Part shown: positions 101 through 64,000 of the stretch, one piece after another
Layout: every line of letters begins with the position of its first letter
Position numbering within the stretch: the stretch's first letter is position 1
Virus record (IMG/VR): IMGVR_UViG_3300048008_000449
Span: 124,001 to 188,000 of that record
Strand: one strand, 5' to 3'
DNA: 64,000 bases
Notes under the pieces: model-generated
Database searches by the model: none
The model's input: only the letters and a program-made list of their open reading frames with translations
What the model was told of the DNA's origin: nothing
Made by a program: the position numbers and the translations under genes

Positions 101-481
101 TTAATCCCAATGCATCACGTTATGCTTTTGATGCTCGTATGTTTCTTTTAATTGTGTCATTACAGGAATAGAAAATCTAAAACTAAATCTATTAAAATTT
201 ACGGCTGCAAAGCTAGCAGGCTCACATTCAGGTCTTGGTCCTGATTTACTGTGATACCACCAAATCTTTCCATCGCCCTTCATTTCTAAACCTTGTATTC
301 CTTCACCTTTATCCCAATTTTCTAAAATATATTCAAAATCTTTTTGAAGTATTTCTCTCGCAATAACAACATAGTCTGTTACTTTAAAAGAGATCTTAAC
401 TCTACCTAAATCTTTAAATAAGTAAATTTTAATTGGATCTGAAAATAAAACTACTTCGTCTCTATCCTTTATTGTAGGCAT
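101..481 (-). CDS. hypothetical protein
   Basis: 126-aa ORF, GGAG RBS upstream, tightly packed on the coding strand. Confidence 0.7.
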   Translation of the reverse strand: MPTIKDRDEVVLFSDPIKIYLFKDLGRVKISFKVTDYVVIAREILQKDFEYILENWDKGEGIQGLEMKGDGKIWWYHSKSGPRPECEPASFAAVNFNRFSFRFSIPVMTQLKETYEHQKHNVMHWD

Positions 482-1211
482 CAGTTATCTCCTTTGCTAG
501 TTCTTTATTTATTTCTTGATGATTTTGAAAATCTTCATAGTATTGATGTATCCAATTTTGATCTGGACTATCAATTCCCACTGTATCCCATAATGTATTA
601 AGTCCATCTAATGTAGACCATTGACTTTGATTTAATGTAATATCACCTTCATCATCGTTAATTTCATTATTAAATTGTTTTTTAGCATTAAAATTAGAAA
701 CAATAGTTTCTGTTGATTGCCAAGCATGATCGTCTTTGCTGTAGTTTGCATTACGTTCATCTTCCATTAAGTAATTATACTCACGTGCTGCCCAACTAAC
801 AATGTTACCATCCCATTCGTCAATTCTTGTTCTAATCATTATTACTGGTATTCCTCTACTCCATTTCCAAATATCTTTATAATTTTGTGCATGTAGTAAT
901 ACGGCAATACTTTTTGTTTCAATTAAGTTTAATAATCCGTCTAATTGATCATTTGAAATATTCATAGTATTTCTAACGTTATAATTATACCATTGATTAT
1001 CAACATCTGATATATTCCAATAGTCATCATGTACACGTATTTTACCTAGCTCGCCTGGTTCATGGTCAATTTCTTTTCCATCTAGTTCGTAACTTGCCCA
1101 GTGTTCTCCTGCTTGGCTTTCTCCGTGTAACATAGGACTATTATTAAGCAAATATGGAACTTCCATTTGACTTATGCAACTATGACTGCATACTAAGTAT
1201 AGTGTATTCAT
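462..1211 (-). CDS. hypothetical protein, possibly degenerate sulfotransferase-like P-loop fold
   Basis: 249-aa ORF; N-terminal beta-loop-helix YLVCSHSCISQMEVPYLLNNSP. Confidence 0.6.
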   Translation of the reverse strand: MNTLYLVCSHSCISQMEVPYLLNNSPMLHGESQAGEHWASYELDGKEIDHEPGELGKIRVHDDYWNISDVDNQWYNYNVRNTMNISNDQLDGLLNLIETKSIAVLLHAQNYKDIWKWSRGIPVIMIRTRIDEWDGNIVSWAAREYNYLMEDERNANYSKDDHAWQSTETIVSNFNAKKQFNNEINDDEGDITLNQSQWSTLDGLNTLWDTVGIDSPDQNWIHQYYEDFQNHQEINKELAKEITDAYNKG

Positions 1212-1466
1212 TTAATCCTCTAAGTTTTTTCTTTTTTCTCGAATTGCTTCTTGCAAATCAAGTATTTGTTCATTTTCTATTAATCTAATAATTGTTTCAT
1301 TAACGCCTATTTCATGTTGTATCATTCCTAATTTAACCATTAACTTATCAATTTCCTTTGTGTAATAATCAAGTTCTTTTTGTTTACGAGCTCTTCTGTC
1401 GTAAATGTCTGATATATCAATTATTAACTTTGGTTTCTTATTACTGTTATGTCCTATTAAGCTCAT
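1212..1466 (-). CDS. hypothetical coiled-coil protein
   Basis: 84-aa ORF with GAGGTG RBS. Confidence 0.7.
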   Translation of the reverse strand: MSLIGHNSNKKPKLIIDISDIYDRRARKQKELDYYTKEIDKLMVKLGMIQHEIGVNETIIRLIENEQILDLQEAIREKRKNLED

Positions 1467-1489
1467 CTGTCACCTCTTCTAATAAAACA

Positions 1490-1570
1490 CAGGGTTAGCT
1501 GTCCGCTGGCACTGTCCTACGGTGTTGACATGCAAGCAATGAATCTCTGCCGGGCCATGTTTGCTACCTG
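1490..1570 (-). ncRNA. candidate structured RNA (multi-stem junction), family unknown
   Basis: GC-rich intergenic island; nested pairings CAGG/CCUG, UAGC/GCUA, UGGC/GCCA, GCAG(A)G/CUUGC, UGUC/GACA. Confidence 0.45.
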
Positions 1571-1576
1571 CTAGTA

Positions 1577-2284
1577 CTATTTACCAGTAAAAATACTGTA
1601 CCCAATTTTGTATTCAATACCTTGAGCATTAAAGTTTACTGCACTATGTAATTTACCCATATCAAATGTAATTGCATCGCCAGGTTGCCAACGTACAATT
1701 GATTCTACTGTAAGTCCGTGTAGAGCTTCGTATGGTACATGTGTTAGATATTCATCGTATATTTGTTTATTAAATGGAATATCTGTGAATCCTTCTATCT
1801 TAGAATAATCAGTTAAACTTTTATTATAAAAACTTTCAGGTACTTTTGGATATCCTCTAAAACACTTAATAGGGCCATCTAAATAATATTGATCAAATAC
1901 AACAAAATTAGTTGGCTTTGATATTTCTAAAGGAATAACTACTGTCTTAAAGATATCATATATCTTTTCGTGATAATCATCGTTATGAACTATGTGAGGT
2001 CTTTCTACTCTAAATATATTACTACCCCAAACCATATTGTCGCCAATTAAATTATCTACAAAATTTTGTACAGGAGTAAACCATGATTCATATTTCTGTC
2101 TGTCTGGGCTATAGTTCATTACTACAGGACCTTTTGATCCTATATCTTTGTATTTTACAATTTGCTCAGAGTTGTGATACTGATTAAGTAAGTAATCGAT
2201 AAATCCTTGATTAACTACACCTTTGTGTAATTTTGCTGTTTCGTATCTATCAGTAATAACTTTCTTTTGTTCAGCAGTTCTCAT
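1577..2284 (-). CDS. 2OG-Fe(II) oxygenase-like protein
   Basis: HxD (PHIVHNDD) and distal His (KLHSA) with DSBH-like spacing. Confidence 0.6.
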   Translation of the reverse strand: MRTAEQKKVITDRYETAKLHKGVVNQGFIDYLLNQYHNSEQIVKYKDIGSKGPVVMNYSPDRQKYESWFTPVQNFVDNLIGDNMVWGSNIFRVERPHIVHNDDYHEKIYDIFKTVVIPLEISKPTNFVVFDQYYLDGPIKCFRGYPKVPESFYNKSLTDYSKIEGFTDIPFNKQIYDEYLTHVPYEALHGLTVESIVRWQPGDAITFDMGKLHSAVNFNAQGIEYKIGYSIFTGK

Positions 2285-3060
2285 CCAACAAATGCTCTTT
2301 CTATTACAAATTCACCAGGTGTCTTGCTATCGCCTTCGTTAAATCCTATTCCCTCTAAATAATCTTTTAGTTCTAAATTCATTTCCATTGATCCACATAT
2401 CATAACTCTATCGTGTTCTGCATCAATTGGTGGTAACAATAATTTATCTTGTACTTTACCTTCATACATTGCTGTTGTTACTCTGCCTTCATTTTCATAA
2501 GGCTCACGTGTACATGTAAAATATGTTCTAAGTTTTCCTTCAGTAACTTCGCCAAAAATCTCATCAGTATTTAGGCTTTCAATAAGCTCTCTAAAAGGTA
2601 ATTCTTTTGCTGTTCTTGCACCCCATACTACAATTACCCTACTGTAATGTTCATACGTGTCTACGCCTCTTATAATGCTCATAAACGGTGCAATTCCGGT
2701 ACCTGTAGCTATTAGGTATAAGTTACGTCCAGGCTTTAAATTTGTGTGTACTAAGGTGCCTACTGCTTTACTATTCACTATTATTTCGTCACCTTCTTTT
2801 ACATGTTGTAATTTACTTGTTAATGGACCATCTTGTACTTTGATACTATAAAATTCCAATGTTTCTTGATGATTAGGACTTGCTACACTGTATGCCCTCA
2901 TTATAGGTTTATTCTTTTGTAATTTTTCTGACCAATTATCTAATCCAATCATTAAAAATTCACCGTCTCTAAAACGTGTACCTGGATCACGTGTTATTTC
3001 AAAATGCATTAATTGATCTGTATAGTGTGTTACGTTAAGTACTTTTTCTTTATTTGCCAT
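2281..3060 (-). CDS. fpr: ferredoxin--NADP+ reductase
   Basis: RAYSVAS FAD motif, GPLTSKL, ATGTGIAPF, MICGS, C-terminal GEFVIERAF. Confidence 0.95.
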   Translation of the reverse strand: MANKEKVLNVTHYTDQLMHFEITRDPGTRFRDGEFLMIGLDNWSEKLQKNKPIMRAYSVASPNHQETLEFYSIKVQDGPLTSKLQHVKEGDEIIVNSKAVGTLVHTNLKPGRNLYLIATGTGIAPFMSIIRGVDTYEHYSRVIVVWGARTAKELPFRELIESLNTDEIFGEVTEGKLRTYFTCTREPYENEGRVTTAMYEGKVQDKLLLPPIDAEHDRVMICGSMEMNLELKDYLEGIGFNEGDSKTPGEFVIERAFVG

Positions 3061-4778: not shown

Positions 4779-4853
4779 TGGTAGTCCCTAGGAGAATCGA
4801 ACTCCTCTTTTCAGGATGAAAACCTGATGTCCTAACCGATAGACGAAGGGACC
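4779..4853 (-). tRNA. tRNA-Glu (UUC)
   Basis: GGTCCCT...AGGGACT-A-CCA cloverleaf; anticodon arm TCAGG-TTTTCAT-CCTGA; GTTCGATTC T-loop. Confidence 0.95.
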
Positions 4854-4855
4854 AT

Positions 4856-4932
<77 letters not shown>

Positions 4933-4944
4933 TTATTAGTTAGT

Positions 4945-5404: not shown

Positions 5405-5438
5405 AATATTCTCCTATACAGTTATTTATATAATTAAT

Positions 5439-5858
5439 CTATCTATGATGTTTTAATTCATAATAGTTGCCAGTTTCATCATTAGGATTTTTACCTTGAT
5501 AATCTCTAACCGCAGCTTTAATTGCATCTTCTGCTAACACACTACAATGAATCTTAACTGGTGGCAACGCTAGTTCTTCAACTATCGTTGTATTTTTTAT
5601 TTCACCAGCTTCAATTAAATTCATACCTTTTAACATAGTTGTTACCATACTTGAACTAGCAATTGCACTACCGCAACCATATGTTTTAAATTTTGCATCT
5701 TCTATGATACCATCTGTTACTTTAATTTGTAACCGCATTACGTCACCACAAGCCGGAGCTCCTACCATACCTGTTCCTACGTCTGCGGCATTGGCATCCA
5801 TTTTACCTACATTTCGTGGGTTATTGTAGTGGTCTAACACTTTTTCTGAATATGCCAT
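5439..5858 (-). CDS. iscU: Fe-S cluster scaffold IscU
   Basis: YSEKVLDHY.NPRNVG, GAPACGDVM, GCGSAIASSS, LPPVKIHCS. Confidence 0.97.
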   Translation of the reverse strand: MAYSEKVLDHYNNPRNVGKMDANAADVGTGMVGAPACGDVMRLQIKVTDGIIEDAKFKTYGCGSAIASSSMVTTMLKGMNLIEAGEIKNTTIVEELALPPVKIHCSVLAEDAIKAAVRDYQGKNPNDETGNYYELKHHR

Positions 5859-5870
5859 AAGCCTATTCTC

Positions 5871-7931: not shown

Positions 7932-9452
7932 TTATGGGGTTTGTTGGAATTGTGATGGTACTAGTTGTACCCATGTTGTTCCATTCCAACCTTCAAACAT
8001 AGCTGTATCTGTATTGAAAAAGAATTGTCCTGGTACTGGACTAGTTGGTCTTTGTGCAGCAGTACCATTTTCCGCAATAGCTGGTGTTCCTGGTATTCCT
8101 GCTGGTCCTGCTGGTCCTTGTGGGCCAGTTGGTCCTTGTGGGCCTGCTACTGTACTATCTGCACCGTCTTGACCATTGATACCATTGATACCATTAGTAC
8201 CATTTGTTCCGTTAGCACCGGCTGGTCCTGCTGGTCCTTGTGGTCCTGTTGGTCCAGTTGGGCCTGTTGGTCCAGTTGAACCTGTTCCTGTTCCTGAATT
8301 ACCAGTAACTACTTCTTCATTTAAATTTGTAGTAGATGCAGGAGAAGGTGTAACTTTTGTTCCAGTTTCAGCTAATCCAGTCATACCTGGTTGTTGTTGT
8401 GCAATTCTAGGACTTCCAGAACTAGATTCTTGTACGGTTTGCGTACTACGTTCAGTGTAACCTATAACTCTATTACAATGATCGTATATTGGTTCTCTTT
8501 CAGACAATGGCACTGTTGGATCGCCATCGTTTTCTAATCTATTTAACATTTCAGGTTCAAGTAGATAATGGAATATATTATTTCCATCTTCGTCTACTTC
8601 ATAACCTTTTAAACTATTATAAACTGATTGTAAATTACTTGCATACTGTTGACTTTTTGCAAGTGTCATGTTATCTGTATCTATTGCAACACCAACACCT
8701 GTATTAATTCTTTCTTGAGGTGCAAATAAACTACCACCTTGTCCACCTGATTCTGTTCCTGCAAAATTATTTTCAAACTCAATTAAGTTTCCAATATCAT
8801 TTTTAAATGCATTCAAATCACTTATAATATTGTTTTTAACTGCTTCTGGTAAATTTGCTAGGTTGTTAAATTGTGATCCTAGTTTTTGTAATAGTCCACC
8901 TGTAAATAAGTTTGGGTTAAACTTACCATCTGTACCAATACATCCGCCAATATCGCTATCTGCCATTTGACCCAATGTATCAAGTATATCTTTACCTGCA
9001 CCTGTGAAACTTCCCATTGCATCTCTTAATACGTTTGGAATAGCACGTGGAACAACTGGTGTACCACAGAAGTTAATCATATTAGCAATAGCCGCAAATT
9101 CTGCTATAGCCGCATTTAATCTTCCTAGTGCGTTATCAATGTTAGTGTGTGCGATAAAGTCGTCTAATGCATTTTCTGCTTCTTGTAATGCATCTCTTAA
9201 ATCTTCTAAGCCTGCAGGTATCTCAGGTATTAGTCTACCTATGTTAACCTTTAAGCATATTTGTAAATTTGGGAGTTTTATGCCGTTTCCGGCCAATATA
9301 CTACAAATGATTTCTTTCAAGCTGTACGCTTGTGTTTGAGCTGTTATACTACCATTATTTAGGTCTATATCAGCACCAGTAGGAATATCAACAGTTGTTC
9401 TATTGATATAATCACTAGCGTCTTTCAAGCCATTTACAAAATCATTTGCCAT
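7932..9452 (-). CDS. virion/baseplate-associated protein with collagen-like segment
   Basis: Gly-X-Y run (GPT/GPQ/GPA/GTN/GIN); C-terminal GTAAQRP..P..G.FFFNT...FEGWNG..W fibre module; follows the PAAR gene. Confidence 0.7.
   Translation of the reverse strand: MANDFVNGLKDASDYINRTTVDIPTGADIDLNNGSITAQTQAYSLKEIICSILAGNGIKLPNLQICLKVNIGRLIPEIPAGLEDLRDALQEAENALDDFIAHTNIDNALGRLNAAIAEFAAIANMINFCGTPVVPRAIPNVLRDAMGSFTGAGKDILDTLGQMADSDIGGCIGTDGKFNPNLFTGGLLQKLGSQFNNLANLPEAVKNNIISDLNAFKNDIGNLIEFENNFAGTESGGQGGSLFAPQERINTGVGVAIDTDNMTLAKSQQYASNLQSVYNSLKGYEVDEDGNNIFHYLLEPEMLNRLENDGDPTVPLSEREPIYDHCNRVIGYTERSTQTVQESSSGSPRIAQQQPGMTGLAETGTKVTPSPASTTNLNEEVVTGNSGTGTGSTGPTGPTGPTGPQGPAGPAGANGTNGTNGINGINGQDGADSTVAGPQGPTGPQGPAGPAGIPGTPAIAENGTAAQRPTSPVPGQFFFNTDTAMFEGWNGTTWVQLVPSQFQQTP
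8083..8290 (-). repeat. collagen-coding 9-bp periodic repeats
   Basis: gctggtcctgctggtccttgtgg occurs at 8101 and 8221; accattgat tandem. Confidence 0.85.
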
Positions 9453-15028: not shown

Positions 15029-15057
15029 AGTATACTACTGTTGTGATAAGATGTCAA
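15029..15057 (-). promoter_or_regulatory. sigma70 promoter, probably leaderless exonuclease mRNA
   Basis: TTGACA-N17-TATACT-N6-ATG. Confidence 0.8.
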
Positions 15058-49954: not shown

Positions 49955-51413
49955 TTTTATTCCACTTTAATAACTTCTGTAAGTAATTATCAGGAATTTC
50001 TGTAAATTTATCCATTTCTTGTTTATCAATCCATACTAGATTTGGATGTGTAAGAGTTCCACGTGATGATAACACTAAAACGTTATTCTGATATGAGCTA
50101 TCTTTAATCTTGCCCATTAATTCATTATGTAATTCCCATCGTTGCTGTAAACTATAATAAAACGAAGTAGGTAAGTAATGAAATATGTTACTTAGATAAC
50201 AAAATGTTATTGGATGACGTAATCTATCTGTTTTAAAAGAATTAACAAATCCTTGATATGTATTTGGATCAAAAATGTTAATTGGCAAATAAACTACTTC
50301 AATCTCTGGTAATACTTCAGTTATCCATTTTTGAAATCCACGTTCATTTAATTTATCAAATACTTCTTGTGTATGTGGTAACTTATTTTTTCCTCTAAAT
50401 ATATCTCTTTGGTATTTTTCATCTGGTGCTAATTTATTCATTAAGTCAGTAGCAAATTTTTCGTAATTAGTACCGTCCCATTGTTCAATAATTGTTTTTG
50501 TAATATTAATAGCAAATTTACTAATATCGTAAACAAGTATCTTACTGTATTTGTCACATCCTAGTTCAAATGCATATATTAATGGTGTTAATCCTGCGGC
50601 CGGTACAACTAGTGTATCCCATTTTTCGTCCCATTCTGGATATTGTAATTTTCTTCTTTCAACTTCAAGATGAATATCTCTCAATGGCTCAGTATTAGCA
50701 ATAAAGAATATGTCTAAATCAATCTGTTCCATAACACCTGATAAATGTCTTGGTCCATCTTCTTTTACTTCTGGATAAGAATAATGTTTCTCATCTCTAA
50801 TATTTTTATTCCACGATAGAATTCGTTGTTGGTCATCTAATAAAGACTTTACTAAATTCCAACCTGTATGTTTTGCATTATATGTTTTAGTATTTTTACC
50901 TGGTCCAATCCAATGAGGGGTATAATCATCATGCCAATTTGATATACTTCTAGCAGGTTCAATTGTTTCTAATGATTTAGCTTCTGGTGAACCCCAAGCT
51001 GGCTTGCCTGCTTTTACCCACCATTCAACATCAAGCATAAATGCTTGTGGATGTAAAGAATAATATTCATCGCCTTTATCAACTATATGTCCAATAAATG
51101 TTGCATCTTTATTTTCTTCATAAAATTTTACAAACTGTTCTTTAAAATTAGATAAAGGAGTTGTTCCTTGTTTGAACACTAATATCTTTTTATATTTCTT
51201 CTCAACTGCATCTTCTAACAAACCTTCTATAGTATCATTGGCCATTTGTTCGTGGAAATAGAATCCCAATTCCATTGACCAATAATCTGTTAAGTTTTTA
51301 GTGTATCCTCGAGCGAAGTCATCTTTAATGCTATTGTTATATAGCCAGCCAAACCCTAATTCTTTTGATTTACTTTTATGTTGCCACCATTGATGCCCAA
51401 ACATGTTTAACAT
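49947..51413 (-). CDS. two-domain hypothetical protein, paralog of 48503..49954
   Basis: LVVPAAG, VYDIS, YLSNIFHY; GHIVDKGDEYYSLHPQ; YTP.WIGPG; FFIANTE. Confidence 0.65.
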   Translation of the reverse strand: MLNMFGHQWWQHKSKSKELGFGWLYNNSIKDDFARGYTKNLTDYWSMELGFYFHEQMANDTIEGLLEDAVEKKYKKILVFKQGTTPLSNFKEQFVKFYEENKDATFIGHIVDKGDEYYSLHPQAFMLDVEWWVKAGKPAWGSPEAKSLETIEPARSISNWHDDYTPHWIGPGKNTKTYNAKHTGWNLVKSLLDDQQRILSWNKNIRDEKHYSYPEVKEDGPRHLSGVMEQIDLDIFFIANTEPLRDIHLEVERRKLQYPEWDEKWDTLVVPAAGLTPLIYAFELGCDKYSKILVYDISKFAINITKTIIEQWDGTNYEKFATDLMNKLAPDEKYQRDIFRGKNKLPHTQEVFDKLNERGFQKWITEVLPEIEVVYLPINIFDPNTYQGFVNSFKTDRLRHPITFCYLSNIFHYLPTSFYYSLQQRWELHNELMGKIKDSSYQNNVLVLSSRGTLTHPNLVWIDKQEMDKFTEIPDNYLQKLLKWNKNV

Positions 51414-52080: not shown

Positions 52081-52109
52081 ATTATAGTGGGTTTTTAATT
52101 ATTTGTCAA
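52081..52109 (-). promoter_or_regulatory. consensus sigma70 promoter, probably leaderless dNMP kinase mRNA
   Basis: TTGACA-N17-TATAAT-N6-ATG. Confidence 0.85.
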
Positions 52110-52734
52110 TAACAAAGTTATTGTTTCTAAGTTTTTCAACTACGTCTTCAAACTTCTCACCTAATACTTTAATTCTTAGGTAAATTCTTTCTCTTTTAAT
52201 AGTAGGTACACCGTGTACAGTCATTCCATTAAATAATGTAGGGTGCTTATTGCTATAGTAGTGATTATATTCAATATCTAAATCATTCCATCCATATTTC
52301 TTTTCATAGTTAACATTTCTTTCTGGGGTAACTCCAACTCTACTATAAAAACTAATTGGTTCGCCTGCATCTTCTGGCATAATAGGAAACATTATTCCAC
52401 ACCACATGTAATGATCAGTATGAGGGTGAAAGCTATAACCTGGATCGTAATGTAATAAATCAATGTCACGTGGAGCAATAGGTTGTTTGAAGTTAAACAT
52501 ATTAACGTATTTTTCTATTACTGGATAATCAAGTAAGTTTTTGCCTTCAGTTTTTTGTACTGCAATAGCGTTCATACCTGTTCTGCCTTTGAACTCTCTC
52601 TTTTCTGGAGAAAGGTATTGCATATAATCTCCAAATTGCATTATATTATGTTTATGTTGATTTACAAAATCTAATAGTTCTAACCTATCGTATGTTACTT
52701 CGTCGATAGTACAGTGGTGATTACCAAGTTGCAT
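52099..52734 (-). CDS. 2OG-Fe(II) oxygenase-like protein
   Basis: YDPGYSFHPHTD, TVHGV, ERIYLRI. Confidence 0.7.
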   Translation of the reverse strand: MQLGNHHCTIDEVTYDRLELLDFVNQHKHNIMQFGDYMQYLSPEKREFKGRTGMNAIAVQKTEGKNLLDYPVIEKYVNMFNFKQPIAPRDIDLLHYDPGYSFHPHTDHYMWCGIMFPIMPEDAGEPISFYSRVGVTPERNVNYEKKYGWNDLDIEYNHYYSNKHPTLFNGMTVHGVPTIKRERIYLRIKVLGEKFEDVVEKLRNNNFVIDK

Positions 52735-56183: not shown

Positions 56184-57389
56184 TTATTTTGATTTATAGT
56201 GAATTAATTTGTCATAATATAGTGCTAAAGTAGCCCATATTGCGTCTGGGTACAAGTTAGTATATTTGTTTCCCATTTTATGATAATTTTCCCATACTGT
56301 TTTACTTACATCAAACTTACTGTAATATTTCCAAAAATCAGTATCTGTTCTATCACTTAACATGTAATGATGTTTTATATATGTACTATTATCATTCCAA
56401 ACATTACGCATTGCTCTATTGTAAGTTTTAGCCCCATATCCACGTTTTAAGCACCGTACAAGCGTTGTTATACTGAATTGCGTCATAAACAGTGCATTAC
56501 TTTCTAAAGGGTCTATAAAGCCGTTACTGAGCCCTACTGCAACTACATTATTGTGCCAGGGATTAGCTAAGACACTAGGATTCCATTTTAACAGTCTAGG
56601 TGTTTTTCCCATAAAGGGAGTTCTGTGTGCATTTACTTTATTAAACTCTGCAAGTGCATCTTCGTCAGTTTGATGTTTGCTACTAAACACATATCCTGTT
56701 CCAATTCTATTTGTTAAATCAATTATAAATTGCCAACCATTACTACGTGCTACGCTTTGAGTGTATCCTTGTACATCATTATCTTGCAATTCAAAAGGAC
56801 AAACCCATGCTCTATCTACTAAATGATTTTCTAATTGTACTTCAGTATTGTCTTTTACAAATTTTCTACGAAACCCTGTGCAGTCTATATATAAATCATA
56901 TCCCTCTGGTAACTCGTCTAATGTGTCTATAATGTGAGTTACATTTTTACAATTATTTTTAACTATGTCTCCGGCTTTTTCAGCATCTAAGTGATATGCA
57001 GTTGCTTGCCAGCCACCTTTGTGATATAGTTGATCATTAATGTTATGCTTATCAACAATACCACTATCGTATTGTTGTTTCCATTTATCAAAAACATTAT
57101 TATCATTAAACCAAAAGGTGAATGCAAACGGATCGCCATTTGGCTTATTCCATTGACTCTTTATGTTTCCAAATTTCTTTTGTGCATTACTTTTTTCCAT
57201 CCATTCGTCTTCTGACATTCCCATGTCTTCAAAGAATTGTGCAATCTGTGGTAATGTACTTTCGCCTACGCCTATAATAGGAATATCACTACTTTCAATA
57301 AGTGTAATATCATAATCTGGAAATTGTTTTTCTAAGTATCCTGCGGCCCACCATCCAGTAGTTCCGCCTCCAATAATACAAATTTTCAT
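56184..57389 (-). CDS. flavin-dependent (tryptophan-halogenase-family) enzyme
   Basis: IIGGGTTGW, IGVGEST, KFG, YHLDA, YIDCTGF, GWQFII, GFIDPLES. Confidence 0.88.
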   Translation of the reverse strand: MKICIIGGGTTGWWAAGYLEKQFPDYDITLIESSDIPIIGVGESTLPQIAQFFEDMGMSEDEWMEKSNAQKKFGNIKSQWNKPNGDPFAFTFWFNDNNVFDKWKQQYDSGIVDKHNINDQLYHKGGWQATAYHLDAEKAGDIVKNNCKNVTHIIDTLDELPEGYDLYIDCTGFRRKFVKDNTEVQLENHLVDRAWVCPFELQDNDVQGYTQSVARSNGWQFIIDLTNRIGTGYVFSSKHQTDEDALAEFNKVNAHRTPFMGKTPRLLKWNPSVLANPWHNNVVAVGLSNGFIDPLESNALFMTQFSITTLVRCLKRGYGAKTYNRAMRNVWNDNSTYIKHHYMLSDRTDTDFWKYYSKFDVSKTVWENYHKMGNKYTNLYPDAIWATLALYYDKLIHYKSK

Positions 57390-57452: not shown

Positions 57453-58424
57453 TTATTTTTCTTCAATTAGTCTTTCAAACTCTCTCAAACGTTTATATAC
57501 GCTTGCTAGTTCAATAATAGTAGGCCATGCTTTAAGTATATATTGCATTGAACCTTCTACTCTACCAAAAGCTCTAATAATTTGTTGCATCACACCTAGT
57601 GTTACAACACCTGCTACAATAGCTGGTGCTAAAAATACATAAGCTGATAATACATTTGCTTGTAAATATGAAATTCTACCTATATTAAAATACAAGTATC
57701 TAATATAAGATTTAAAGTGAATACTTCTTACATCTTGAAATAATTCATCAATTCTTTTAGGACGAATTGTCACATCATCTTCTGCAATTACAAGTATTTT
57801 TCTGTAAGCTGCTTCTTTCTTTTGTAAATCATATTCTACTCCAACTAGACGTAATAACCAACCTAATCCAATTAAGAATATTGTTCCTCCAATACTCCAA
57901 ATTAACGCACCAGTTACTAGTCCATATTGCCAATCACCAAAGAAGAAGATTGGAATACCAACTGATAGTCCTAATAGAATAGGAACAAATTGTACTAGAA
58001 CCATTACTGATTCAATTAAACTTGTACCAAGTCCTTCCATGATACGACTAAACTTAATAGTATCTTCTTGTACACGTTGAGCTGCACCTTCAATAGTACG
58101 TGCTTTGTCGTATACACTATGATACCATTCAACCATTGCTGCTCTCCATCTAAACAAATAGTGTGCAGTAAAGTAACTAACAACTACGGCAATCAAAACA
58201 TAAATTGCAGCCAAGTAAATAAAAGTTCCTAAACTACTCCAATATTCTGTAATTGTAATAGCGTTTGGTGCACCAAGTGCTTTTTGAATCATATCGTAAA
58301 ACTGCCCAAACCATTCATTAATTTTAACGTCAATTTGAACTTGTACCCATAATGAACTTAGGATAATAGCTGAACCCAGCCACGACCACAATGCCCATTG
58401 TTTTTGTGTGAAAAATCTAAACAT
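57453..58424 (-). CDS. sbmA: SbmA/BacA-family peptide transporter
   Basis: INEW...FYD.IQ.AL, HY.FRWR.AM, IEGAAQRVQEDT.KF, Q.KEAAYRK.LV.AED, QI..AFG.V..S.QY....W.TIIEL.SVYKRL..FE; no NBD. Confidence 0.92.
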   Translation of the reverse strand: MFRFFTQKQWALWSWLGSAIILSSLWVQVQIDVKINEWFGQFYDMIQKALGAPNAITITEYWSSLGTFIYLAAIYVLIAVVVSYFTAHYLFRWRAAMVEWYHSVYDKARTIEGAAQRVQEDTIKFSRIMEGLGTSLIESVMVLVQFVPILLGLSVGIPIFFFGDWQYGLVTGALIWSIGGTIFLIGLGWLLRLVGVEYDLQKKEAAYRKILVIAEDDVTIRPKRIDELFQDVRSIHFKSYIRYLYFNIGRISYLQANVLSAYVFLAPAIVAGVVTLGVMQQIIRAFGRVEGSMQYILKAWPTIIELASVYKRLREFERLIEEK

Positions 58425-61000: not shown

Positions 61001-61431
61001 TAATAGCAAGTGGTTGTTTATTTTTAAGCACAGACACAGGAAGAATAATGCTTCAACAACGAAGCGGTGAAGTTAATCACCCACGAACATGGGGTTTCTT
61101 TGGAGGCAAGGCTGAAAAAGGTGAAAGACCAACTGAAGCACTATTGCGTGAAATAGAAGAAGAGCTTGGATTAGTTCCAGATATAAAAAAAGTTATTCCT
61201 GTTAATAAATTTACTAGTCCTAATAAGAAATTTGTTTACCATACATTTTTAGTCACAGTTGAAGAGGAGTTTATTCCTGTTCTTAATAACGAAAGTGATG
61301 GTTATTGCTGGATTAAAATTGGCAACTGGCCTAGACCGTTGCACCCTGGTGCAAAAATACAATGTAATTCAAAACAGTTTGTTAAAAAAATAAAAACAGT
61401 ATACGAACAGTTTACTACATCGCTGGATTAA
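60997..61431 (+). CDS. NUDIX hydrolase
   Basis: GGKAEKGE.P.EALLREIEEELG Nudix box; start set to ATG (MIIASG). Confidence 0.92.
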   Translation: MIIASGCLFLSTDTGRIMLQQRSGEVNHPRTWGFFGGKAEKGERPTEALLREIEEELGLVPDIKKVIPVNKFTSPNKKFVYHTFLVTVEEEFIPVLNNESDGYCWIKIGNWPRPLHPGAKIQCNSKQFVKKIKTVYEQFTTSLD

Positions 61432-62131
61432 TAATACCCATTTCTTTTCTACTGAATATATTATTTAAAAATGAATTAAATACTTCTTCACTATCATATT
61501 GATGAATATCACTAAAATCTGGATCAATTTCATACATTTCAGAATTTGTTCTCATGCTATGTGAGAAACCCAATGCAGTTGCAGTTTCTTTCCAACCATA
61601 ATAACGTTTTAAATTAAAATTATTTTTTATTTCATTACATTCTATAGTAATTTGTTGTAGCATTCTTTCGTCATTTTTATACCAAGTATATATTGGATAT
61701 GTAATATCCCACCCACCTACATGTTTCCACCAATTAAAGCATTCTTGTGGTGTATCATAAAAAGACCAAAACCTTGCTTTTGGAAATAGTTGTTTTAATA
61801 ATGGCAAATGATAGCTAAACCAATGACTTTTAATAATTTTAGTTCCATAATTCCAATCAGTAAATGGTGCTTTAAATTCTTGTATTATTTCTTCTTTAGT
61901 TAATGTATCTAATATATCAAACTTATGTCCTACTGGATTATCAGGACCCCAATAAGCACCTCGATGCCATCCAACAACTTGTCCGTCAACTTTTTTTCTA
62001 TATACAAAGTTATTCTTATTATCAGACAAATTAATATCTTTACATATAAGACTAAGCATACGAATTGCTCCACTCCATCTAGATCCTGGAGCTCCTGTAA
62101 CTATAATTAAATCTTCACCTTGATATTCCAT
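61415..62131 (-). CDS. P-loop/sulfotransferase-like hypothetical protein
   Basis: IIVTGAPGSRWSG, KIIKSHW, LKQLFP.ARF. Confidence 0.55.
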   Translation of the reverse strand: MEYQGEDLIIVTGAPGSRWSGAIRMLSLICKDINLSDNKNNFVYRKKVDGQVVGWHRGAYWGPDNPVGHKFDILDTLTKEEIIQEFKAPFTDWNYGTKIIKSHWFSYHLPLLKQLFPKARFWSFYDTPQECFNWWKHVGGWDITYPIYTWYKNDERMLQQITIECNEIKNNFNLKRYYGWKETATALGFSHSMRTNSEMYEIDPDFSDIHQYDSEEVFNSFLNNIFSRKEMGIINPAM

Positions 62132-62940
62132 TAGTTTCCTTTATTAATTTCTTTTAAAATTTTGTTTGTAAGGTATTCATGTGTCTTAGGTCCTGGGTGT
62201 GTTTGGTCTCTTCCTAAATCTATCATTTCTTCTTTACTGTACTGTATTGATTTAATGTGTGTTGGTTCATAATCATAAAACCAATGCTTTCTTCTTTCGT
62301 TTGGTTCTAATATATAATACTGTGCATTTGGAAATGATTGTAGTAACGCTAGTTCAAACATTTTAAATATTTTACCATTGCTTTGTTTAAAAGTTTCTCT
62401 AACAAGTTTTCTAACTTTTTCATCTTTTTCTTTTCTTAACCAAAATCGCATAAGCCAATTAGTATCATTAACACCCCAAAAATCAGTAAGTATAACATAT
62501 TTTGGATTAAGTTTAAAATCAAATAGATTATCTGCCATATCAGTTAATGTATCAAAATCACTTATATTAAAATGATTTAATGATAATTTTTTAGAAAGCA
62601 AATATGGTATACTCATTTCATATGGTATTCCAGTTCCTAATAATAAACTTCCGCCGGCAAATACTATACCAACATCAGTTAAATCATCTGGACCTCTATA
62701 TCCATATTTGTTCCATTTATAACTAAAGTCTAAATTAGTATCATTATCCCAATCAAGTTCTTGTATTGCATTAAAAGTAAAATGATCAGTTCCATTTTCT
62801 CCTACTTTGCATTTGTTTCCTGTATCATGCCGGCCATAATATTTTATTGTTTCATTTGGCAATCTTGGCTGTTTTTCAGCTTTTTCTTTTTGATTATAAA
62901 AGAACTTTGGATCTACCTCAGGAAAGTCGTTTTCTATCAT
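62131..62940 (-). CDS. SGNH-like hypothetical protein
   Basis: Y.WN.YGYRG, FAGGSLLLGTG, RDQTHPG. Confidence 0.6.
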   Translation of the reverse strand: MIENDFPEVDPKFFYNQKEKAEKQPRLPNETIKYYGRHDTGNKCKVGENGTDHFTFNAIQELDWDNDTNLDFSYKWNKYGYRGPDDLTDVGIVFAGGSLLLGTGIPYEMSIPYLLSKKLSLNHFNISDFDTLTDMADNLFDFKLNPKYVILTDFWGVNDTNWLMRFWLRKEKDEKVRKLVRETFKQSNGKIFKMFELALLQSFPNAQYYILEPNERRKHWFYDYEPTHIKSIQYSKEEMIDLGRDQTHPGPKTHEYLTNKILKEINKGN

Positions 62941-63890
62941 ACTTTAATAACTCTATTAGGATCTGGATTATCAATCATGTGTTGTACTTTATCATTAATG
63001 AATCCAGTAAATTGGAAAGTAACTCTTGGTGTATATCCAAAGTTAGCTGTTCCATGTGGCATATTACACCAATCGTATGTTATACATTCGCCTGCTTTAT
63101 ACTGATGATAATATGTATTACCAAATTGCCATACATGTCCATAATCCCAATCTTGTAGCATAACTAAAAACCTTCTTAATTTTAAAGGATTTTTATCAGC
63201 GCCAGCTTTAGTCCATACTTCACGCCATCCTGGTCTTGCATATCTCATTTGTTGATCAATATGAATAGGAGTAACTTGTCCTAGTCTTTGAATATGTAAT
63301 CTGGATTGATGAACATCTACTCCTAATGCATCTATCATTCTAAGTAGTATTGCATACTCTGGTGATTCATTACGCTTTGCGAAATAGTTTTTTCCATCTT
63401 TATCAAATCTTGCTCTAACAACCATGTCATGATACATACTACTTACGTCTTCTTTACCAGAAGCAAGTAGAACGTCTTGTATTTCTCCGTCATGTAAATC
63501 TTTATCTTGTTTACTTAGATTACGCTGTCTATAATTTCCTATAGTCATTTCTGTTGCAGTTTTTAGTGCATGCTGTACTGCTTCACTAAAATCTCCTTCA
63601 AATCTACAAGGTACTACAAATGTTTCTTCATGTGGATCAGCAAAAGTATCAAAGTGCCAATCGGCACGTAATTTATTATGCTCCCATCTGCTTGGAACTC
63701 CATCTACTTTAAAAATGTTATCCATTTTGTCATGTTTTTCCATCTGTTCATTACTATACATTTCATCTTTATATGCTGAATCAATTTGGGTATTACCTTC
63801 TTGATGTTTATGTTCTGCTTTTTTAACTGCATCTACAAGGTCATCTATTTTATCGCCACTATAATAATTTTTATCTGTTTTTTGTTTCAT
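62937..63890 (-). CDS. 2OG-Fe(II) oxygenase-like protein
   Basis: GQVTPIHID, RRFLVMLQDW, MPHGTAN.G..PRVTFQFTG. Confidence 0.7.
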   Translation of the reverse strand: MKQKTDKNYYSGDKIDDLVDAVKKAEHKHQEGNTQIDSAYKDEMYSNEQMEKHDKMDNIFKVDGVPSRWEHNKLRADWHFDTFADPHEETFVVPCRFEGDFSEAVQHALKTATEMTIGNYRQRNLSKQDKDLHDGEIQDVLLASGKEDVSSMYHDMVVRARFDKDGKNYFAKRNESPEYAILLRMIDALGVDVHQSRLHIQRLGQVTPIHIDQQMRYARPGWREVWTKAGADKNPLKLRRFLVMLQDWDYGHVWQFGNTYYHQYKAGECITYDWCNMPHGTANFGYTPRVTFQFTGFINDKVQHMIDNPDPNRVIKV

Positions 63891-63891
63891 G

Positions 63892-64000
63892 TTAATGTTC
63901 TTTACAGTTTGGTAACATACTAATAATTGTCTTTAAGTTATTTTCAGTTAAAAACACACTCATCAATATATGATATATGTCGTCTGACATAGCAAAGCTA
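63892..64000 (-). CDS. 3' end of a gene, probably another oxygenase related to 44418..45083
   Basis: SFAMSDDIYHILMSV...IISMLP vs GFSFVDGVYHLSAAL...LLDVLP. Confidence 0.5.
   Translation of the reverse strand, partial: SFAMSDDIYHILMSVFLTENNLKTIISMLPNCKEH

What the first reader, a model, noticed from the sequence alone, without database searches (positions are those of the whole stretch)
462..64000. Dispersed phage-encoded tailoring-enzyme set: candidate virion or small-molecule modification system
Seen: six complete HxD...H oxygenase-like genes (1577, 27382, 44418, 47745, 52099, 62937) plus a partial seventh (63892). Also a flavin halogenase, two full and one partial SAM-fold paralogs, up to five sulfotransferase-like and two SGNH-like proteins, Fpr, IscU and SbmA. 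They sit singly or in small cassettes between core T4-like genes, several behind the late ATAAATA motif. Established: marine T4-like phages are known to carry multiple 2OG-Fe(II) oxygenases and PrnA-like halogenases, mostly with unknown substrates. Inference: hydroxylation, halogenation, methyl/sulfo/acyl transfer and reductant supply together look like a scattered biosynthetic or post-translational pathway. It could act on virion proteins, host surface polymers or a peptide/small molecule.
Basis: partly seen in the sequence, partly recalled or inferred. Interest (0 to 1): 0.75.

Follow-up and report, generated by a model that had tools for sequence, protein, structure and literature searches.

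The report
Scattered tailoring enzymes in marine jumbo phage
A fragment of an uncultured marine jumbo phage does carry many hydroxylase, transferase and halogenase-type genes wedged between its core genes, but they look like several small modules gathered at different times, not one pathway, and similar gene sets are already described in marine phages.

Summary
All six complete HxD...H ORFs and the seventh, cut by the window end, are Fe(II)/2-oxoglutarate oxygenase-like, with evidence from strong (47745, 52099) to weak (44418). Also confirmed: a Trp-halogenase-family flavoprotein, SbmA, IscU, an Fpr-like reductase and two SGNH-motif proteins. The "SAM-fold paralogs" are 480-aa fusions of a GT-A glycosyltransferase fold and a methyltransferase fold. 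Only one of "up to five" sulfotransferases is supported (61415).

The phage is not a classical T4-like cyanophage. It is a 205-kb fragment (CheckV 56% complete) on the PA5oct/RaK2 jumbo branch. Its SbmA is about 85% identical to the SAR11 chromosomal gene.

In 320 related IMG/VR loci the tailoring genes are accessory (5-80% occupancy) between fully conserved core genes. On a gp15 tree each shows only 1-4 changes, so co-occurrence reflects shared ancestry. Two tight modules stand out: [GT-A/MTase x1-2 + AspH-like hydroxylase], behind a late-type ATAAATA motif, and [sulfotransferase-like + SGNH + two AspH-like].

Best reading: several independent "hydroxylate, then decorate" modules acting on proteins or glycans. 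Fpr and IscU more likely serve the 13+ radical SAM genes outside the window. One scattered pathway is not supported, and no substrate is known.

The parts
1..97 (-). First 32 codons of a third paralogue of the GT-A/MTase family; the gene continues upstream of the window (G000:C1:122997-124097)
   Evidence: BLASTP to 48503, E 6e-30
1577..2284 (-). 2OG-Fe(II) oxygenase-like protein of the DUF6445/PhyH-like type
   Evidence: HND at residue 100 and a downstream LHS motif. Atlas features and structure of the nearest cluster point to DUF6445, 2OG-FeII_Oxy_3/5 and PhyH, TM about 0.6. No Pfam or PHROG hit.
2281..3060 (-). Fpr-like ferredoxin/flavodoxin-NADP reductase-family flavoprotein
   Evidence: Pfam NAD_binding_1 E 4e-11 with a weak FAD_binding_6 hit. 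NCBIfam PRK10926 E 3.6e-33, below the curated cut-off.
5439..5858 (-). IscU Fe-S cluster scaffold
   Evidence: Pfam NifU_N E 2e-50. Present in 3 of 17 relatives that cover the site.
7932..9452 (-). Collagen-like (GXY repeat) fibre protein; a candidate substrate, by inference only
   Evidence: Pfam Collagen E 4e-7. GPT/GPQ/GPA repeats at residues 391-457 and a C-terminus shared with a second fibre-like ORF. Present in 91% of relatives.
15035..15796 (-). SGNH/GDSL-type hydrolase-like protein, near-core in the lineage
   Evidence: Invariant G14, S16, G50, D225 and H227; N74 nearly invariant. Pfam Lipase_GDSL_2 only E 0.0098. Occupancy 79%.
27382..28050 (-). AspH-like (Asp_Arg_Hydrox-type) oxygenase-like protein; a rare single insertion
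   Evidence: Atlas feature score 0.95 to viral Asp_Arg_Hydrox clusters. Occupancy 5%.
44418..45083 (-). HxD...H protein of family A1 (with 63892 and G63826), weakly AspH-like
   Evidence: Invariant H114, D116, R132, H170 and H181. Profile against PDB hits 'beta-hydroxylase' 7v4f/7v4o at E about 0.01. hhalign to 63892, E 3e-59. Occupancy 25%.
47745..48527 (-). Aspartyl/asparaginyl beta-hydroxylase-family 2OG oxygenase; last gene of the late operon 49947-48503-47745
   Evidence: Pfam PF05118 E 5.8e-11. Invariant H173, D175, H220, R230 and H232. Paralogue G12323 sits next to two more GT-A/MTase genes.
48503..49954 (-). Two-domain protein: N-terminal GT-A glycosyltransferase fold plus C-terminal class-I SAM methyltransferase fold
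   Evidence: 39% identical to 49947. See the 49947 entry for the model and fold searches.
49947..51413 (-). Two-domain GT-A/MTase protein, first gene of the operon, with ATAAATA 32 nt upstream
   Evidence: AF2 model pLDDT 92. Residues 8-231 match GT-A folds (LH3 GT domain, PBCV-1 A64R, ColGalT1, Mimivirus R699; Z about 9). Residues 232-473 match MTase folds (6ulo Z 10.7, EgtD, NNMT). AFDB finds GT2-like hits and an AspH-domain fusion. Invariant G274 and D296. Promoter motif.
52099..52734 (-). 2OG-Fe(II) dioxygenase with a prolyl-hydroxylase/PKHD-like fold
   Evidence: Model pLDDT 94. Foldseek PDB and Swiss-Prot searches. Invariant H105, T106, D107, H174 and R187. Occupancy 40%, 4 changes on the gp15 tree.
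56184..57389 (-). Flavin-dependent halogenase-family protein (PrnA-like) with a degenerate WxWxIP motif; TATAAATA 27 nt upstream
   Evidence: Pfam Trp_halogenase E 1e-72. GGGTTG, the conserved Lys region and PLES are kept; WQFIID replaces WxWxIP. Occupancy 39%, 1 change on the tree.
57453..58424 (-). SbmA/BacA-family inner-membrane transporter, host-derived
   Evidence: Pfam SbmA_BacA E 2e-138. NCBIfam PRK12369 over its cut-off. 83-86% identical to chromosomal genes of Pelagibacter and other marine Alphaproteobacteria.
61415..62131 (-). Divergent sulfotransferase-family protein with an invariant GAPGSRWSG loop; first gene of a five-gene accessory island
   Evidence: 12 of 54 distant homologues hit Pfam Sulfotransfer_3, best E 4e-7. 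The island is gained or lost as a unit: 23/0/0/49 with 62131.
62131..62940 (-). Second SGNH-like protein
   Evidence: Invariant G96, S98, N158, D245 and H248; the window copy reads GVND at block III. Best PDB profile hit is a lysophospholipase L1-like esterase at E 0.27.
62937..63890 (-). 317-aa protein with a C-terminal AspH-like DSBH domain
   Evidence: Atlas features and structure. Invariant H210, D212, H279 and R289.
63892..64000 (-). 3' part of a 192-aa family-A1 HxD...H gene, cut by the window end (complete in the genome to 64470)

Best explanation
The window is part of an uncultured marine jumbo myophage on the PA5oct/RaK2-like branch, whose host is probably a SAR11-like alphaproteobacterium. 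Over time it has gathered several separate accessory enzyme modules between its core replication and virion genes. They are not one pathway.

Two modules are best defined:
1. A late-transcribed operon of one or two GT-A/methyltransferase fusion proteins followed by an AspH-family Fe(II)/2OG hydroxylase.
2. A five-gene island with a sulfotransferase-like protein, an SGNH-like protein and two AspH-like proteins.

Both suggest the same chemistry. An oxygenase installs a hydroxyl group on a cytoplasmic macromolecule. The neighbouring transferase then glycosylates, methylates, sulfates or (de)acylates it.

The most likely substrates are proteins made late in infection, such as collagen-like fibres or other virion proteins, or host surface-glycan precursors. 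The single oxygenases (1577, 27382, 44418, 52099) and the halogenase-family flavoprotein are further independent additions.

SbmA is a captured host transporter. Fpr and IscU most plausibly keep the phage's many radical SAM enzymes, encoded outside the window, supplied with electrons and Fe-S clusters.

Shown: folds and families, gene order, promoter motif, and distribution among relatives. Inferred: enzyme activities, the order of reactions, and every substrate.
For: - Families and folds.
- Catalytic residues are invariant in family alignments.
- Accessory position between fully conserved core genes, with occupancy of 5-80%.
- GT-A/MTase is never found without the AspH gene (23/8/0/34), and the five-gene island behaves as a unit.
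- The cassette [GT-A/MTase x2 + AspH] is duplicated elsewhere in the genome.
- Domain fusions in cellular proteins link AspH with Sulfotransfer_3, and AspH with the MTase-like domain.
- ATAAATA is shared with the sheath, terminase and virion genes and precedes the 49947 operon, 53514, the halogenase and SbmA.
- By eye, the AspH-like and GT-A/MTase sequences printed show no long hydrophobic stretch. No transmembrane predictor was run.
- Host origin of SbmA.
- 13 N-twitch radical SAM genes plus 5 weaker ones in the same genome, and 3-10 in three of five relatives' contigs.
- The Fe-S gene plus radical SAM association is described for marine phages (PMC5332604). AspH, radical SAM and glycosyltransferase genes are described in pelagimyophages (PMC7029224).
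- Identical fragments occur in marine metatranscriptome libraries.
Against: - No substrate was identified.
- The complex prediction for GT-A/MTase with AspH gave no answer.
- Evidence for 44418, 62937, 1577 and both SGNH proteins rests on weak or indirect matches.
- The halogenase, the island and 52099 co-occur strongly in raw counts. A functional link among them is therefore not excluded, only untestable with one independent contrast.
- The late timing of ATAAATA is inferred from the genes it precedes. It also precedes some non-structural genes.
- The record is only about 56% complete, so partners may lie in the unseen part.
- The metatranscriptome signal could be DNA carry-over.
Confidence: 0.5

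Rival explanations
1. One dispersed pathway. Hydroxylases, halogenase, methyl/sulfo/acyl/glycosyl transferases, Fpr, IscU and SbmA, perhaps with the radical SAM operon outside the window, jointly make or tailor one product. The product would be a RiPP-like peptide or small molecule, or a single heavily decorated virion component.
For: - Raw co-occurrence is strong: halogenase with the 61415 island 16/0/0/25, 52099 with halogenase 18/4/2/30.
- Radical SAM enzymes with SPASM or twitch domains include many peptide maturases.
- AspH-like clusters are sometimes linked to Nif11-type leader peptides.
- SbmA is a peptide transporter family.
- A flavin-dependent halogenase needs reduced flavin, which an Fpr-like protein could help supply.
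Against: - Occupancies differ widely, from 5% to 80%.
- Each gene shows only 1-4 changes on the gp15 tree and only one independent contrast exists, so co-occurrence equals clade membership.
- The genes are spread over more than 60 kb in different transcription units.
- No precursor-like small ORF was evident next to the oxygenases.
- SbmA is a recent host copy and an importer.
- The oxygenases belong to at least four unrelated families.
Confidence: 0.12
2. Host cell-surface remodelling. The glycosyltransferase, methyltransferase, sulfotransferase, SGNH and AspH-like enzymes alter host LPS, capsule or outer-envelope glycans during infection. The purpose would be superinfection exclusion or avoiding progeny adsorption to dead cells, as proposed for pelagimyophages. 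LpxO, the lipid A hydroxylase, belongs to the AspH family.
For: - GT-A matches include GT2 and GT25 LPS-type enzymes.
- The pelagimyophage literature proposes this role for glycosyltransferases in hypervariable islands (PMC7029224).
- SGNH enzymes commonly O-acetylate or de-O-acetylate glycans (general knowledge).
- The accessory, fast-turnover distribution fits arms-race genes.
Against: - By eye, no long hydrophobic (membrane) segment shows in the AspH-like or GT-A/MTase sequences; no predictor was run.
- The modules sit inside the virion gene block and use the same promoter motif as virion genes.
- The best structural matches for the GT-A domain include protein glycosyltransferases: LH3, ColGalT1, PBCV-1 A64R.
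- This overlaps with the best explanation, which leaves glycan substrates open.
Confidence: 0.2
3. Nucleic-acid modification. The oxygenases and the GT-A/MTase proteins hypermodify phage DNA bases (hydroxylate, then glycosylate or methylate) or repair alkylated DNA or RNA, as TET/JBP-type and AlkB-type 2OG enzymes do in other phages.
For: - A T4 gp1-like dNMP kinase (51442-52074) lies between 52099 and the GT-A/MTase operon.
- ALKBH6 is among the structural matches of 52099.
- The hydroxylase plus GT plus MTase logic resembles known DNA hypermodification (PMC5889632 for thymidine hypermodification).
Against: - None of the oxygenases matches TET/JBP or AlkB families. The best matches are AspH, PKHD/prolyl hydroxylase and PhyH-like.
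- No thymidylate-synthase-type hydroxymethylase or ThyX was found in the 205-kb record, though the record is incomplete.
- The MTase-fold matches are small-molecule or protein N-methyltransferases, plus one rRNA methyltransferase (AviRa).
Confidence: 0.08
4. Metabolic role without a macromolecular target. Multiple 2OG oxygenases serve to consume or sense 2-oxoglutarate and succinate, or otherwise shift host metabolism, as suggested for cyanophages.
For: The proposal was made for multi-copy 2OG-Fe(II) and PhyH-like genes of T4-like cyanophages (PMC3037559).
Against: - It does not explain the tight physical coupling to transferases.
- It does not explain the late-type promoter.
- The NtcA/2OG logic is specific to cyanobacteria, whereas the SbmA gene here points to an alphaproteobacterial host.
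Confidence: 0.05

Closest known systems
Multi-copy 2OG-Fe(II) oxygenase and PrnA-like halogenase genes of marine T4-like cyanophages (Sullivan et al. 2010, PMC3037559)
   Same: Several unrelated 2OG-oxygenase-superfamily genes and a tryptophan-halogenase-family gene are scattered as sporadic accessory genes among core myovirus genes. Their substrates are unknown.
   Different: This is a different phage lineage: the terminase is nearest PA5oct/RaK2-type jumbo phages, and the host signal is alphaproteobacterial. Most oxygenases here are AspH-type and escape Pfam and PHROGs. They are physically coupled to transferases. The halogenase WxWxIP motif is degenerate.
Pelagimyophage accessory gene sets (Zaragoza-Solas et al. 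2020, PMC7029224)
   Same: An aspartyl/asparaginyl beta-hydroxylase gene, radical SAM cassettes and glycosyltransferases in variable regions of large marine myophages of SAR11. That paper proposes surface modification, untested.
   Different: Those are HTVC008M-type T4-like phages of about 150 kb. Here no cultured phage in the collection has a homologue of the GT-A/MTase protein. The modules lie beside the sheath and gp15 genes rather than in a tail-fibre island.
Fe-S cluster auxiliary genes with many radical SAM genes in marine environmental viral genomes (Nishimura et al. 2017, PMC5332604)
   Same: IscU is carried together with many radical SAM genes in a large marine myophage. The paper reads this as phage-side supply of Fe-S clusters.
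   Different: This genome is not one of the paper's named genomes checked here: the sizes of OBV_N00005 and TARA_ERS488813_N000010 differ, and its length does not appear in the supplement. It adds an Fpr-like reductase. Its radical SAM genes are 13 paralogues of one NCBIfam family, N-terminal twitch.
Collagen lysyl hydroxylase/glycosyltransferase systems (human LH3 and ColGalT1; Mimivirus L230/R699) and PBCV-1 A64R capsid glycosyltransferase
   Same: These are the closest structural matches of the GT-A domain. The logic is the same: a 2OG hydroxylase coupled to a GT-A glycosyltransferase acting on a structural protein. The phage encodes collagen-like fibre proteins.
   Different: Similarity is at fold level only (Z about 9, 7-12% identity). 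The hydroxylase here is AspH-type, not lysyl-hydroxylase-type, and is a separate polypeptide. An MTase domain is fused instead. No evidence links the enzymes to the fibre proteins.
Bacterial multidomain proteins combining Asp_Arg_Hydrox with Sulfotransfer_3 and DUF4915 (TIGR03032-type)
   Same: The same pairing of an AspH-type domain with a Sulfotransfer_3-type domain as in the island 61415-63892.
   Different: In the phage these are separate genes, with an added SGNH-like gene. The bacterial proteins are themselves uncharacterised.

Membership tests
Fe(II)/2-oxoglutarate-dependent oxygenase superfamily (double-stranded beta-helix) | DSBH (jelly-roll) fold | tested here: met
   Met for 52099: model pLDDT 94, Foldseek prob 1.0 to many 2OG dioxygenases. 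Met for 47745 through Pfam PF05118. Only indirect (Atlas nearest clusters) for 1577, 27382 and 62937. Weak for 44418.
Fe(II)/2-oxoglutarate-dependent oxygenase superfamily (double-stranded beta-helix) | HxD/E...H iron-binding triad conserved across homologues | tested here: met
   Invariant H173/D175/H220 or H232 in 47745. H105/D107/H174 in 52099. H210/D212/H279 in 62937. H114/D116/H170 or H181 in 44418/63892. For 1577 and 27382 the motif is present in the single sequence only.
Fe(II)/2-oxoglutarate-dependent oxygenase superfamily (double-stranded beta-helix) | Basic residue (Arg/Lys) binding the 2OG C5 carboxylate after the distal His | tested here: inconclusive
   Invariant Arg lies near the distal His in the alignments: R230 (47745), R183/R187 (52099), R289 (62937). 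Its position in the active site was not checked in 3D.
Fe(II)/2-oxoglutarate-dependent oxygenase superfamily (double-stranded beta-helix) | 2OG-dependent turnover and substrate hydroxylation | not testable with these tools
   Needs enzyme assays.
Flavin-dependent (tryptophan-type) halogenases, Pfam PF04820 | Sequence-family membership and GxGxxG FAD-binding motif | tested here: met
   245.8 bits against a cut-off of 21. GGGTTG at residues 7-12.
Flavin-dependent (tryptophan-type) halogenases, Pfam PF04820 | WxWxIP signature motif | tested here: not met
   The window protein has WQFIID. 35 of 37 relatives have WQF(I/M/K)(I/V)(D/G/A), and only 2 have WMWEVP. It is therefore filed as a halogenase-family flavoprotein. 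Halogenating activity is uncertain.
Flavin-dependent (tryptophan-type) halogenases, Pfam PF04820 | Catalytic Lys and Glu (PrnA K79/E346 equivalents) | tested here: inconclusive
   A Lys in the conserved A-x-x-K-x-G-N-I-K-x-x-W segment aligns with the K of the canonical relatives. PLE(S/A) is conserved. Equivalence to PrnA residues rests on my memory of the motifs, not on a structural alignment.
SbmA/BacA transporters (PF05992) | Full-length match to the family model | tested here: met
   461.5 bits over profile positions 1-314 of 315. NCBIfam PRK12369 430.8 bits against a cut-off of 385.
IscU/NifU-N Fe-S scaffold (PF01592) | Full-length match to the family model | tested here: met
   170.6 bits over profile positions 1-124 of 127. 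The cluster-ligand cysteines were not inspected.
Ferredoxin/flavodoxin-NADP reductase (Fpr) | Two-domain FAD-binding plus NAD(P)-binding architecture at equivalog level | tested here: inconclusive
   NAD_binding_1 is clear and FAD_binding_6 weak. The best NCBIfam hit is PRK10926 at 114.8 bits, below the cut-off of 390. It is an FNR-superfamily member, but Fpr orthology is not shown. No flavodoxin or 2Fe-2S ferredoxin was found in the record.
GT-A fold glycosyltransferases | GT-A Rossmann-like fold | tested here: met
   Residues 8-231 of the 49947 model match LH3, A64R, ColGalT1, Fringe and R699 at Z 8-9.6. AFDB GT2-like hit E 5e-23. Z is middling by the tool's own notes.
GT-A fold glycosyltransferases | DxD metal/nucleotide-sugar binding motif | tested here: inconclusive
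   G108, H109, L111 and D112 are nearly invariant. In the two window copies a second Asp follows (D-K-G-D), which is not a canonical DxD. Not placed in 3D.
Class I SAM-dependent methyltransferases | Rossmann-like MTase fold with glycine-rich motif I and an acidic residue at the end of strand 2 | tested here: met
   Residues 232-473 match 6ulo (Z 10.7), EgtD, NNMT and PNMT. G274 in the stretch VVPAAGLTP and D296 in the stretch YDIS are invariant. SAM binding itself was not tested.
Sulfotransferases (Pfam Sulfotransfer_3) | Family membership with a 5'-PSB phosphate-binding loop | tested here: inconclusive
   61415 itself has no Pfam hit, but 12 of 54 homologues found by profile search do (best E 4e-7). 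The GAPGSRWSG loop is invariant. The 3'-PB motif was not identified. No other window ORF matches this family.
SGNH/GDSL hydrolases | Blocks I (GDS), II (G), III (GxND) and V (DxxH) | tested here: inconclusive
   15035: G14, S16, G50, D225 and H227 invariant, N74 nearly so. 62131: G96, S98, N158, D245 and H248 invariant; the window copy reads GVND at block III. Database support is weak: Pfam E 0.0098 and PDB profile E 0.27. No structure was predicted.
A single biosynthetic or post-translational gene cluster (co-inherited pathway) | Repeated, independent co-gain and co-loss of the member genes across relatives | tested here: not met
   Occupancies run from 5% to 80%. Each gene shows 1-4 changes on the gp15 tree and only one independent contrast is available. 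Only the two local modules behave as units.

The most novel reading that the evidence does not exclude
This uncultured marine jumbo-phage lineage runs its own protein or glycan decoration machinery late in infection. The chemistry would be hydroxylation followed by O-glycosylation/methylation or O-sulfation, using enzyme families absent from cultured phages. The targets would be its collagen-like fibres or other virion surfaces, a bacteriophage counterpart of giant-virus fibril glycosylation. This could act together with the 13-member N-twitch radical SAM set, which may represent a large, unexplored phage-encoded modification or natural-product chemistry.
Probability: 0.2. Interest if true: 0.8.

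Novelty: new variant of a known kind. Interest (0 to 1): 0.5.

Why it matters
Marine phages are known to carry many 2OG oxygenases, halogenases, radical SAM enzymes and Fe-S helpers, yet a substrate is known for very few of them. This window gives two compact gene modules to test: a hydroxylase with a GT-A/methyltransferase fusion, and two hydroxylases with a sulfotransferase-like and an SGNH-like protein.

The lineage is abundant: about 200 tail-sheath relatives were found in IMG/VR, and identical fragments occur in marine metatranscriptome libraries. That makes expression in E. coli and assays on phage fibre or capsid proteins practical. Results could show whether such phages chemically decorate their virions or their hosts.

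The analysis also shows that the apparent "pathway" is mostly a product of shared ancestry. The same caution applies to co-occurrence arguments for auxiliary genes in general.

Tried and rejected
- Megablast of 20 kb against GenBank phages found nothing.
- PHROGs found nothing for any oxygenase-like ORF, 48503, 3062 or 15035.
- Profile-profile comparison among the six oxygenase families showed no relationship beyond 44418/63892/G63826. "Six paralogues" is therefore rejected.
- Profile searches against PDB sequences were uninformative for 52099, 62937, 61415 and 15035.
- The complex prediction for GT-A/MTase with AspH returned no answer. It counts neither for nor against binding.
- A homologue search for 3825 gave only four unannotated hits. 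Scanning the sulfotransferase-like profile against all ORFs of the genome found only 61415. So 462, 3062 and 3825 stay unassigned.
- The canonical T4 late promoter TATAAATA is not enriched: 5 found against 13.9 expected. Only the 7-mer ATAAATA shows strand and position bias.
- I looked for a thymidylate-synthase-type hydroxymethylase, ThyX, flavodoxin and 2Fe-2S ferredoxin in the genome. None was found, but the record is only 56% complete.
- I checked whether the genome is one of the published Osaka Bay or Tara genomes with IscU or radical SAM genes. It is not.
- Fisher tests of co-occurrence looked impressive but were set aside after the tree-based count.
- Small ORFs next to the oxygenases (44107, 64436, 55711) show no obvious precursor-peptide features.

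Full report
**What the window is.** The 64-kb window is bases 124001-188000 of a single 204,772-bp linear virus record with 34% G+C. CheckV rates the record 56% complete, so the true genome is probably a jumbo phage of roughly 350 kb. Genes are almost all on the minus strand.

Core genes in the window include:
- UvsX, gp32-type SSB, large terminase, tail sheath, tail tube and virion proteins.
- RNR subunits.
- Helicases, primase, gp15, NUDIX and a gp1-like dNMP kinase.
- Five tRNAs.

The phage is only distantly "T4-like". There is no nucleotide match to GenBank phages. The terminase is nearest Pseudomonas phage PA5oct (55.6%), followed by Phosso, Atu_ph07, Vibrio 2.275.O and RaK2/121Q-type jumbo phages. 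IMG/VR holds many relatives, including 197 sheath relatives at 66-100% identity.

**Checking the gene calls: oxygenases.** All six complete ORFs carry HxD plus a distal His, but Pfam recognises only 47745-48527, as Asp_Arg_Hydrox at E 5.8e-11. PHROGs recognises none.
- 52099: I built an alignment of 30 homologues. The model is confident, pLDDT 94. It matches 2OG dioxygenases (AndA, PHD2, bacterial P4H, PiuC; Foldseek probability 1.0) and Swiss-Prot PKHD-type hydroxylases. H105, D107, H174 and R187 are invariant.
- 27382: the ESM Atlas places it among viral Asp_Arg_Hydrox clusters, score 0.95.
- 1577: it falls among clusters related to DUF6445, 2OG-FeII_Oxy_3/5 and PhyH.
- 62937: its C-terminal part sits near AspH-like clusters, more weakly.
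- 44418, the cut gene at 63892 and a third copy outside the window form one family. H114, D116, H170 and H181 are invariant. The only outside link is a weak profile match to a PDB "beta-hydroxylase", E about 0.01.

Profile-profile comparison shows no relationship between the families. These are at least four separate acquisitions, not paralogues.

**Checking the gene calls: the rest.**
- The halogenase is a solid Pfam Trp_halogenase member, E 1e-72. It has GGGTTG, a conserved Lys segment and PLES. The WxWxIP signature, however, reads WQFIID, and it is likewise degenerate in 35 of 37 relatives.
- SbmA (E 2e-138) and IscU (E 2e-50) are clear.
- The Fpr-like protein is an FNR-family flavoprotein below equivalog level.
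- The "SAM-fold paralogues" 48503 and 49947 belong to a six-member family in this genome. None of 38 database homologues has a Pfam domain.
- Their model (pLDDT 92) has two domains. Residues 8-231 form a GT-A fold matching the LH3 glycosyltransferase domain, PBCV-1 A64R, STIV A197, ColGalT1 and Mimivirus R699. Residues 232-473 form a class-I methyltransferase fold matching 6ulo, EgtD and NNMT.
- Full-length look-alikes exist only in uncultured phages and a few cellular proteins. No cultured phage has one.
- Both SGNH candidates keep invariant block I, III and V residues, though database support is weak.
- Of the proposed sulfotransferases only 61415 passes. A profile search found 232 relatives, and 12 of the 54 scanned hit Pfam Sulfotransfer_3. 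No other ORF of the genome matches that profile. 462, 3062 and 3825 remain unassigned.

**Promoter motif.** ATAAATA occurs 26 times on the gene-sense strand and 4 times on the other. It lies within 80 nt upstream of 21 of 80 genes. It is rarer overall than in shuffles, 30 against 46.5, so it is avoided inside genes and kept upstream. It precedes the sheath, terminase and virion genes, and also the 49947 operon, 53514, the halogenase and SbmA. The full T4 octamer TATAAATA is not enriched.

**Distribution among relatives.** I fetched 320 related loci around four anchor genes and mapped every ORF of the genome onto them. Core genes are present wherever their position is covered. The tailoring genes are accessory, with these occupancies:
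- 27382: 5%
- 53514: 10%
- IscU: 18%
- 3062: 17%; 3825: 25%
- 44418: 25%
- Block 61415-62131-62937-63892-64436: 26-36%
- Halogenase: 39%
- 52099: 40%
- 47745: 48%
- GT-A/MTase: 11% and 35% for the two copies
- SbmA: 80%

Two units are tight. GT-A/MTase never occurs without 47745 (23/8/0/34), and the five-gene block is all-or-none. Raw counts also tie the halogenase to that block (16/0/0/25) and to 52099.

On a gp15 tree of 93 sequences, however, the halogenase and the block each change state once, SbmA, 55711 and 53514 each twice, and 52099 four times. Only one independent contrast is available. The pattern is nested, clade-wise accretion. It gives no statistical evidence for functional coupling beyond the local modules.

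**Context outside the window.** The same record encodes 13 members of NCBIfam NF033640 (N-terminal twitch-domain radical SAM) over the curated cut-off, plus five weaker radical SAM matches. Many sit in a plus-strand operon at 1.7-24.6 kb. That operon also holds a second [GT-A/MTase x2 + AspH] cassette and aminotransferase-like, nitroreductase-like and GDSL-like genes. Three of five relatives' contigs searched carry 3-10 radical SAM genes.

This makes IscU and the Fpr-like protein most economically read as support for Fe-S enzymes: cluster supply and, by analogy with E. coli Fpr/flavodoxin, reductive activation. That last step is established knowledge, not tested here. No flavodoxin or ferredoxin was found in the incomplete record.

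SbmA is 83-86% identical to the chromosomal gene of complete Pelagibacter genomes and other marine Alphaproteobacteria. The flanks of those loci share nothing else with the phage apart from a weak match (about 35% identity, 5 loci) to one ORF outside the window. SbmA is therefore a captured host gene and a host clue.

**How it most likely works.** The recurring design is an oxygenase next to O-decorating enzymes. Cellular proteins show the same couplings: AspH with Sulfotransfer_3, and AspH with the MTase-like domain.

I read the window as several independent [quoted passage not shown] modules. Their targets would be cytoplasmic macromolecules late in infection. By eye, the printed sequences show no long hydrophobic stretch that would mark a membrane segment; no predictor was run.

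Virion proteins are the leading candidates, for example the collagen-like fibre 7932-9452, whose GPT/GPQ repeats resemble glycosylated bacterial collagen-like proteins. Host glycan precursors are the main alternative. All substrates are inferred. The complex prediction gave no answer. Marine metatranscriptome libraries contain identical fragments of the operon, but DNA carry-over cannot be excluded.

**Comparison with what is known.**
- Multi-copy 2OG oxygenases and PrnA-like genes in marine T4-like cyanophages: PMC3037559.
- IscU or A-type carrier genes with up to 12 radical SAM genes in marine viral genomes: PMC5332604.
- AspH as a core gene, with radical SAM cassettes and glycosyltransferases in pelagimyophages: PMC7029224.

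New here are the lineage (a jumbo-phage branch), the GT-A/MTase fusion family coupled to AspH, the sulfotransferase/SGNH/AspH island, and the size of the N-twitch radical SAM family.

**Verdict.**
- Observation: partly confirmed.
- Single-pathway interpretation: not supported.
- Module-level tailoring: supported.
- Novelty: a new variant of a known kind.
- Interest: moderate.

Noticed in passing
G000:C1:1700-24600 (+ strand), also 54405-55679, 67027-69400 and 95429-97814 (outside the window; loci L001-L005): There are 13 paralogues of NCBIfam NF033640 (N-terminal twitch-domain radical SAM) over the curated cut-off, plus 5 weaker radical SAM ORFs. None of 14 control genomes has a member over the cut-off. 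The left-end operon mixes them with AspH, GT-A/MTase, aminotransferase-like, nitroreductase-like and GDSL-like genes. This is a larger puzzle than the window itself.
   Followed up: partly
whole record G000: CheckV rates the 204,772-bp record 56% complete and linear, and a 221-kb relative 60%. The lineage is probably a jumbo phage of about 350 kb. The terminase is nearest PA5oct and RaK2-type phages.
   Followed up: partly
window 57453-58424: SbmA is 83-86% identical in amino acids to the chromosomal SbmA of complete Pelagibacter (SAR11) genomes and other marine Alphaproteobacteria. It is a recent host-to-phage capture and a host clue. A jumbo phage on such small cells would be notable.
   Followed up: partly
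window, 30 sites (for example 51439-51445, 57409-57415, 58469-58475, 47702-47708, 39199-39205): ATAAATA is strongly strand-biased (26 against 4), concentrated within 80 nt upstream of starts, and depleted overall against shuffles. It is a promoter-like element lacking the first T of the T4 late consensus.
   Followed up: yes
window 39270-40961: This 563-aa ORF lies between conserved virion genes. In relatives it aligns only in pieces (present at 40% or more coverage in 5 of 21). It looks like a hypervariable structural gene.
   Followed up: no
L084:6800-9310: A distant relative carries four tandem copies of the 44418-type HxD...H gene just upstream of its sheath gene.
   Followed up: no
window 7932-9452 and G000:C1:191335-192696: A collagen-like GXY fibre protein and a second fibre-like ORF share a conserved C-terminal segment of about 50 aa (…AQRP.SPV.GQF.FNTDT…).
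   Followed up: partly
alignment A10 (homologues of 61415): One distant homologue of the sulfotransferase-like family also matches the NCLDV major-capsid N-terminal domain (Pfam Capsid_N, E 8e-24). Several others are fused to methyltransferase domains.
   Followed up: no
window 53514-54233: This 239-aa accessory ORF (10% occupancy) has ATAAATA 12 nt upstream and a weak cupin-type Pfam hit (3-HAO, E 0.006). It may be an eighth cupin-like gene.
   Followed up: no
window 4779-7311: A cluster of five tRNA genes (Glu, Asp, Ala, Leu, Thr) lies next to the SNase-like, IscU and neighbouring accessory genes.
   Followed up: no
window 46900-52800: Four marine metatranscriptome libraries hold fragments 99-100% identical to the window. 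Assembler depth over the sheath reaches 58 in one run, against 2-8 over the AspH, GT-A/MTase and dNMP kinase genes. One 229-nt contig at 51117-51345 has depth about 54 and runs on into unrelated sequence.
   Followed up: partly
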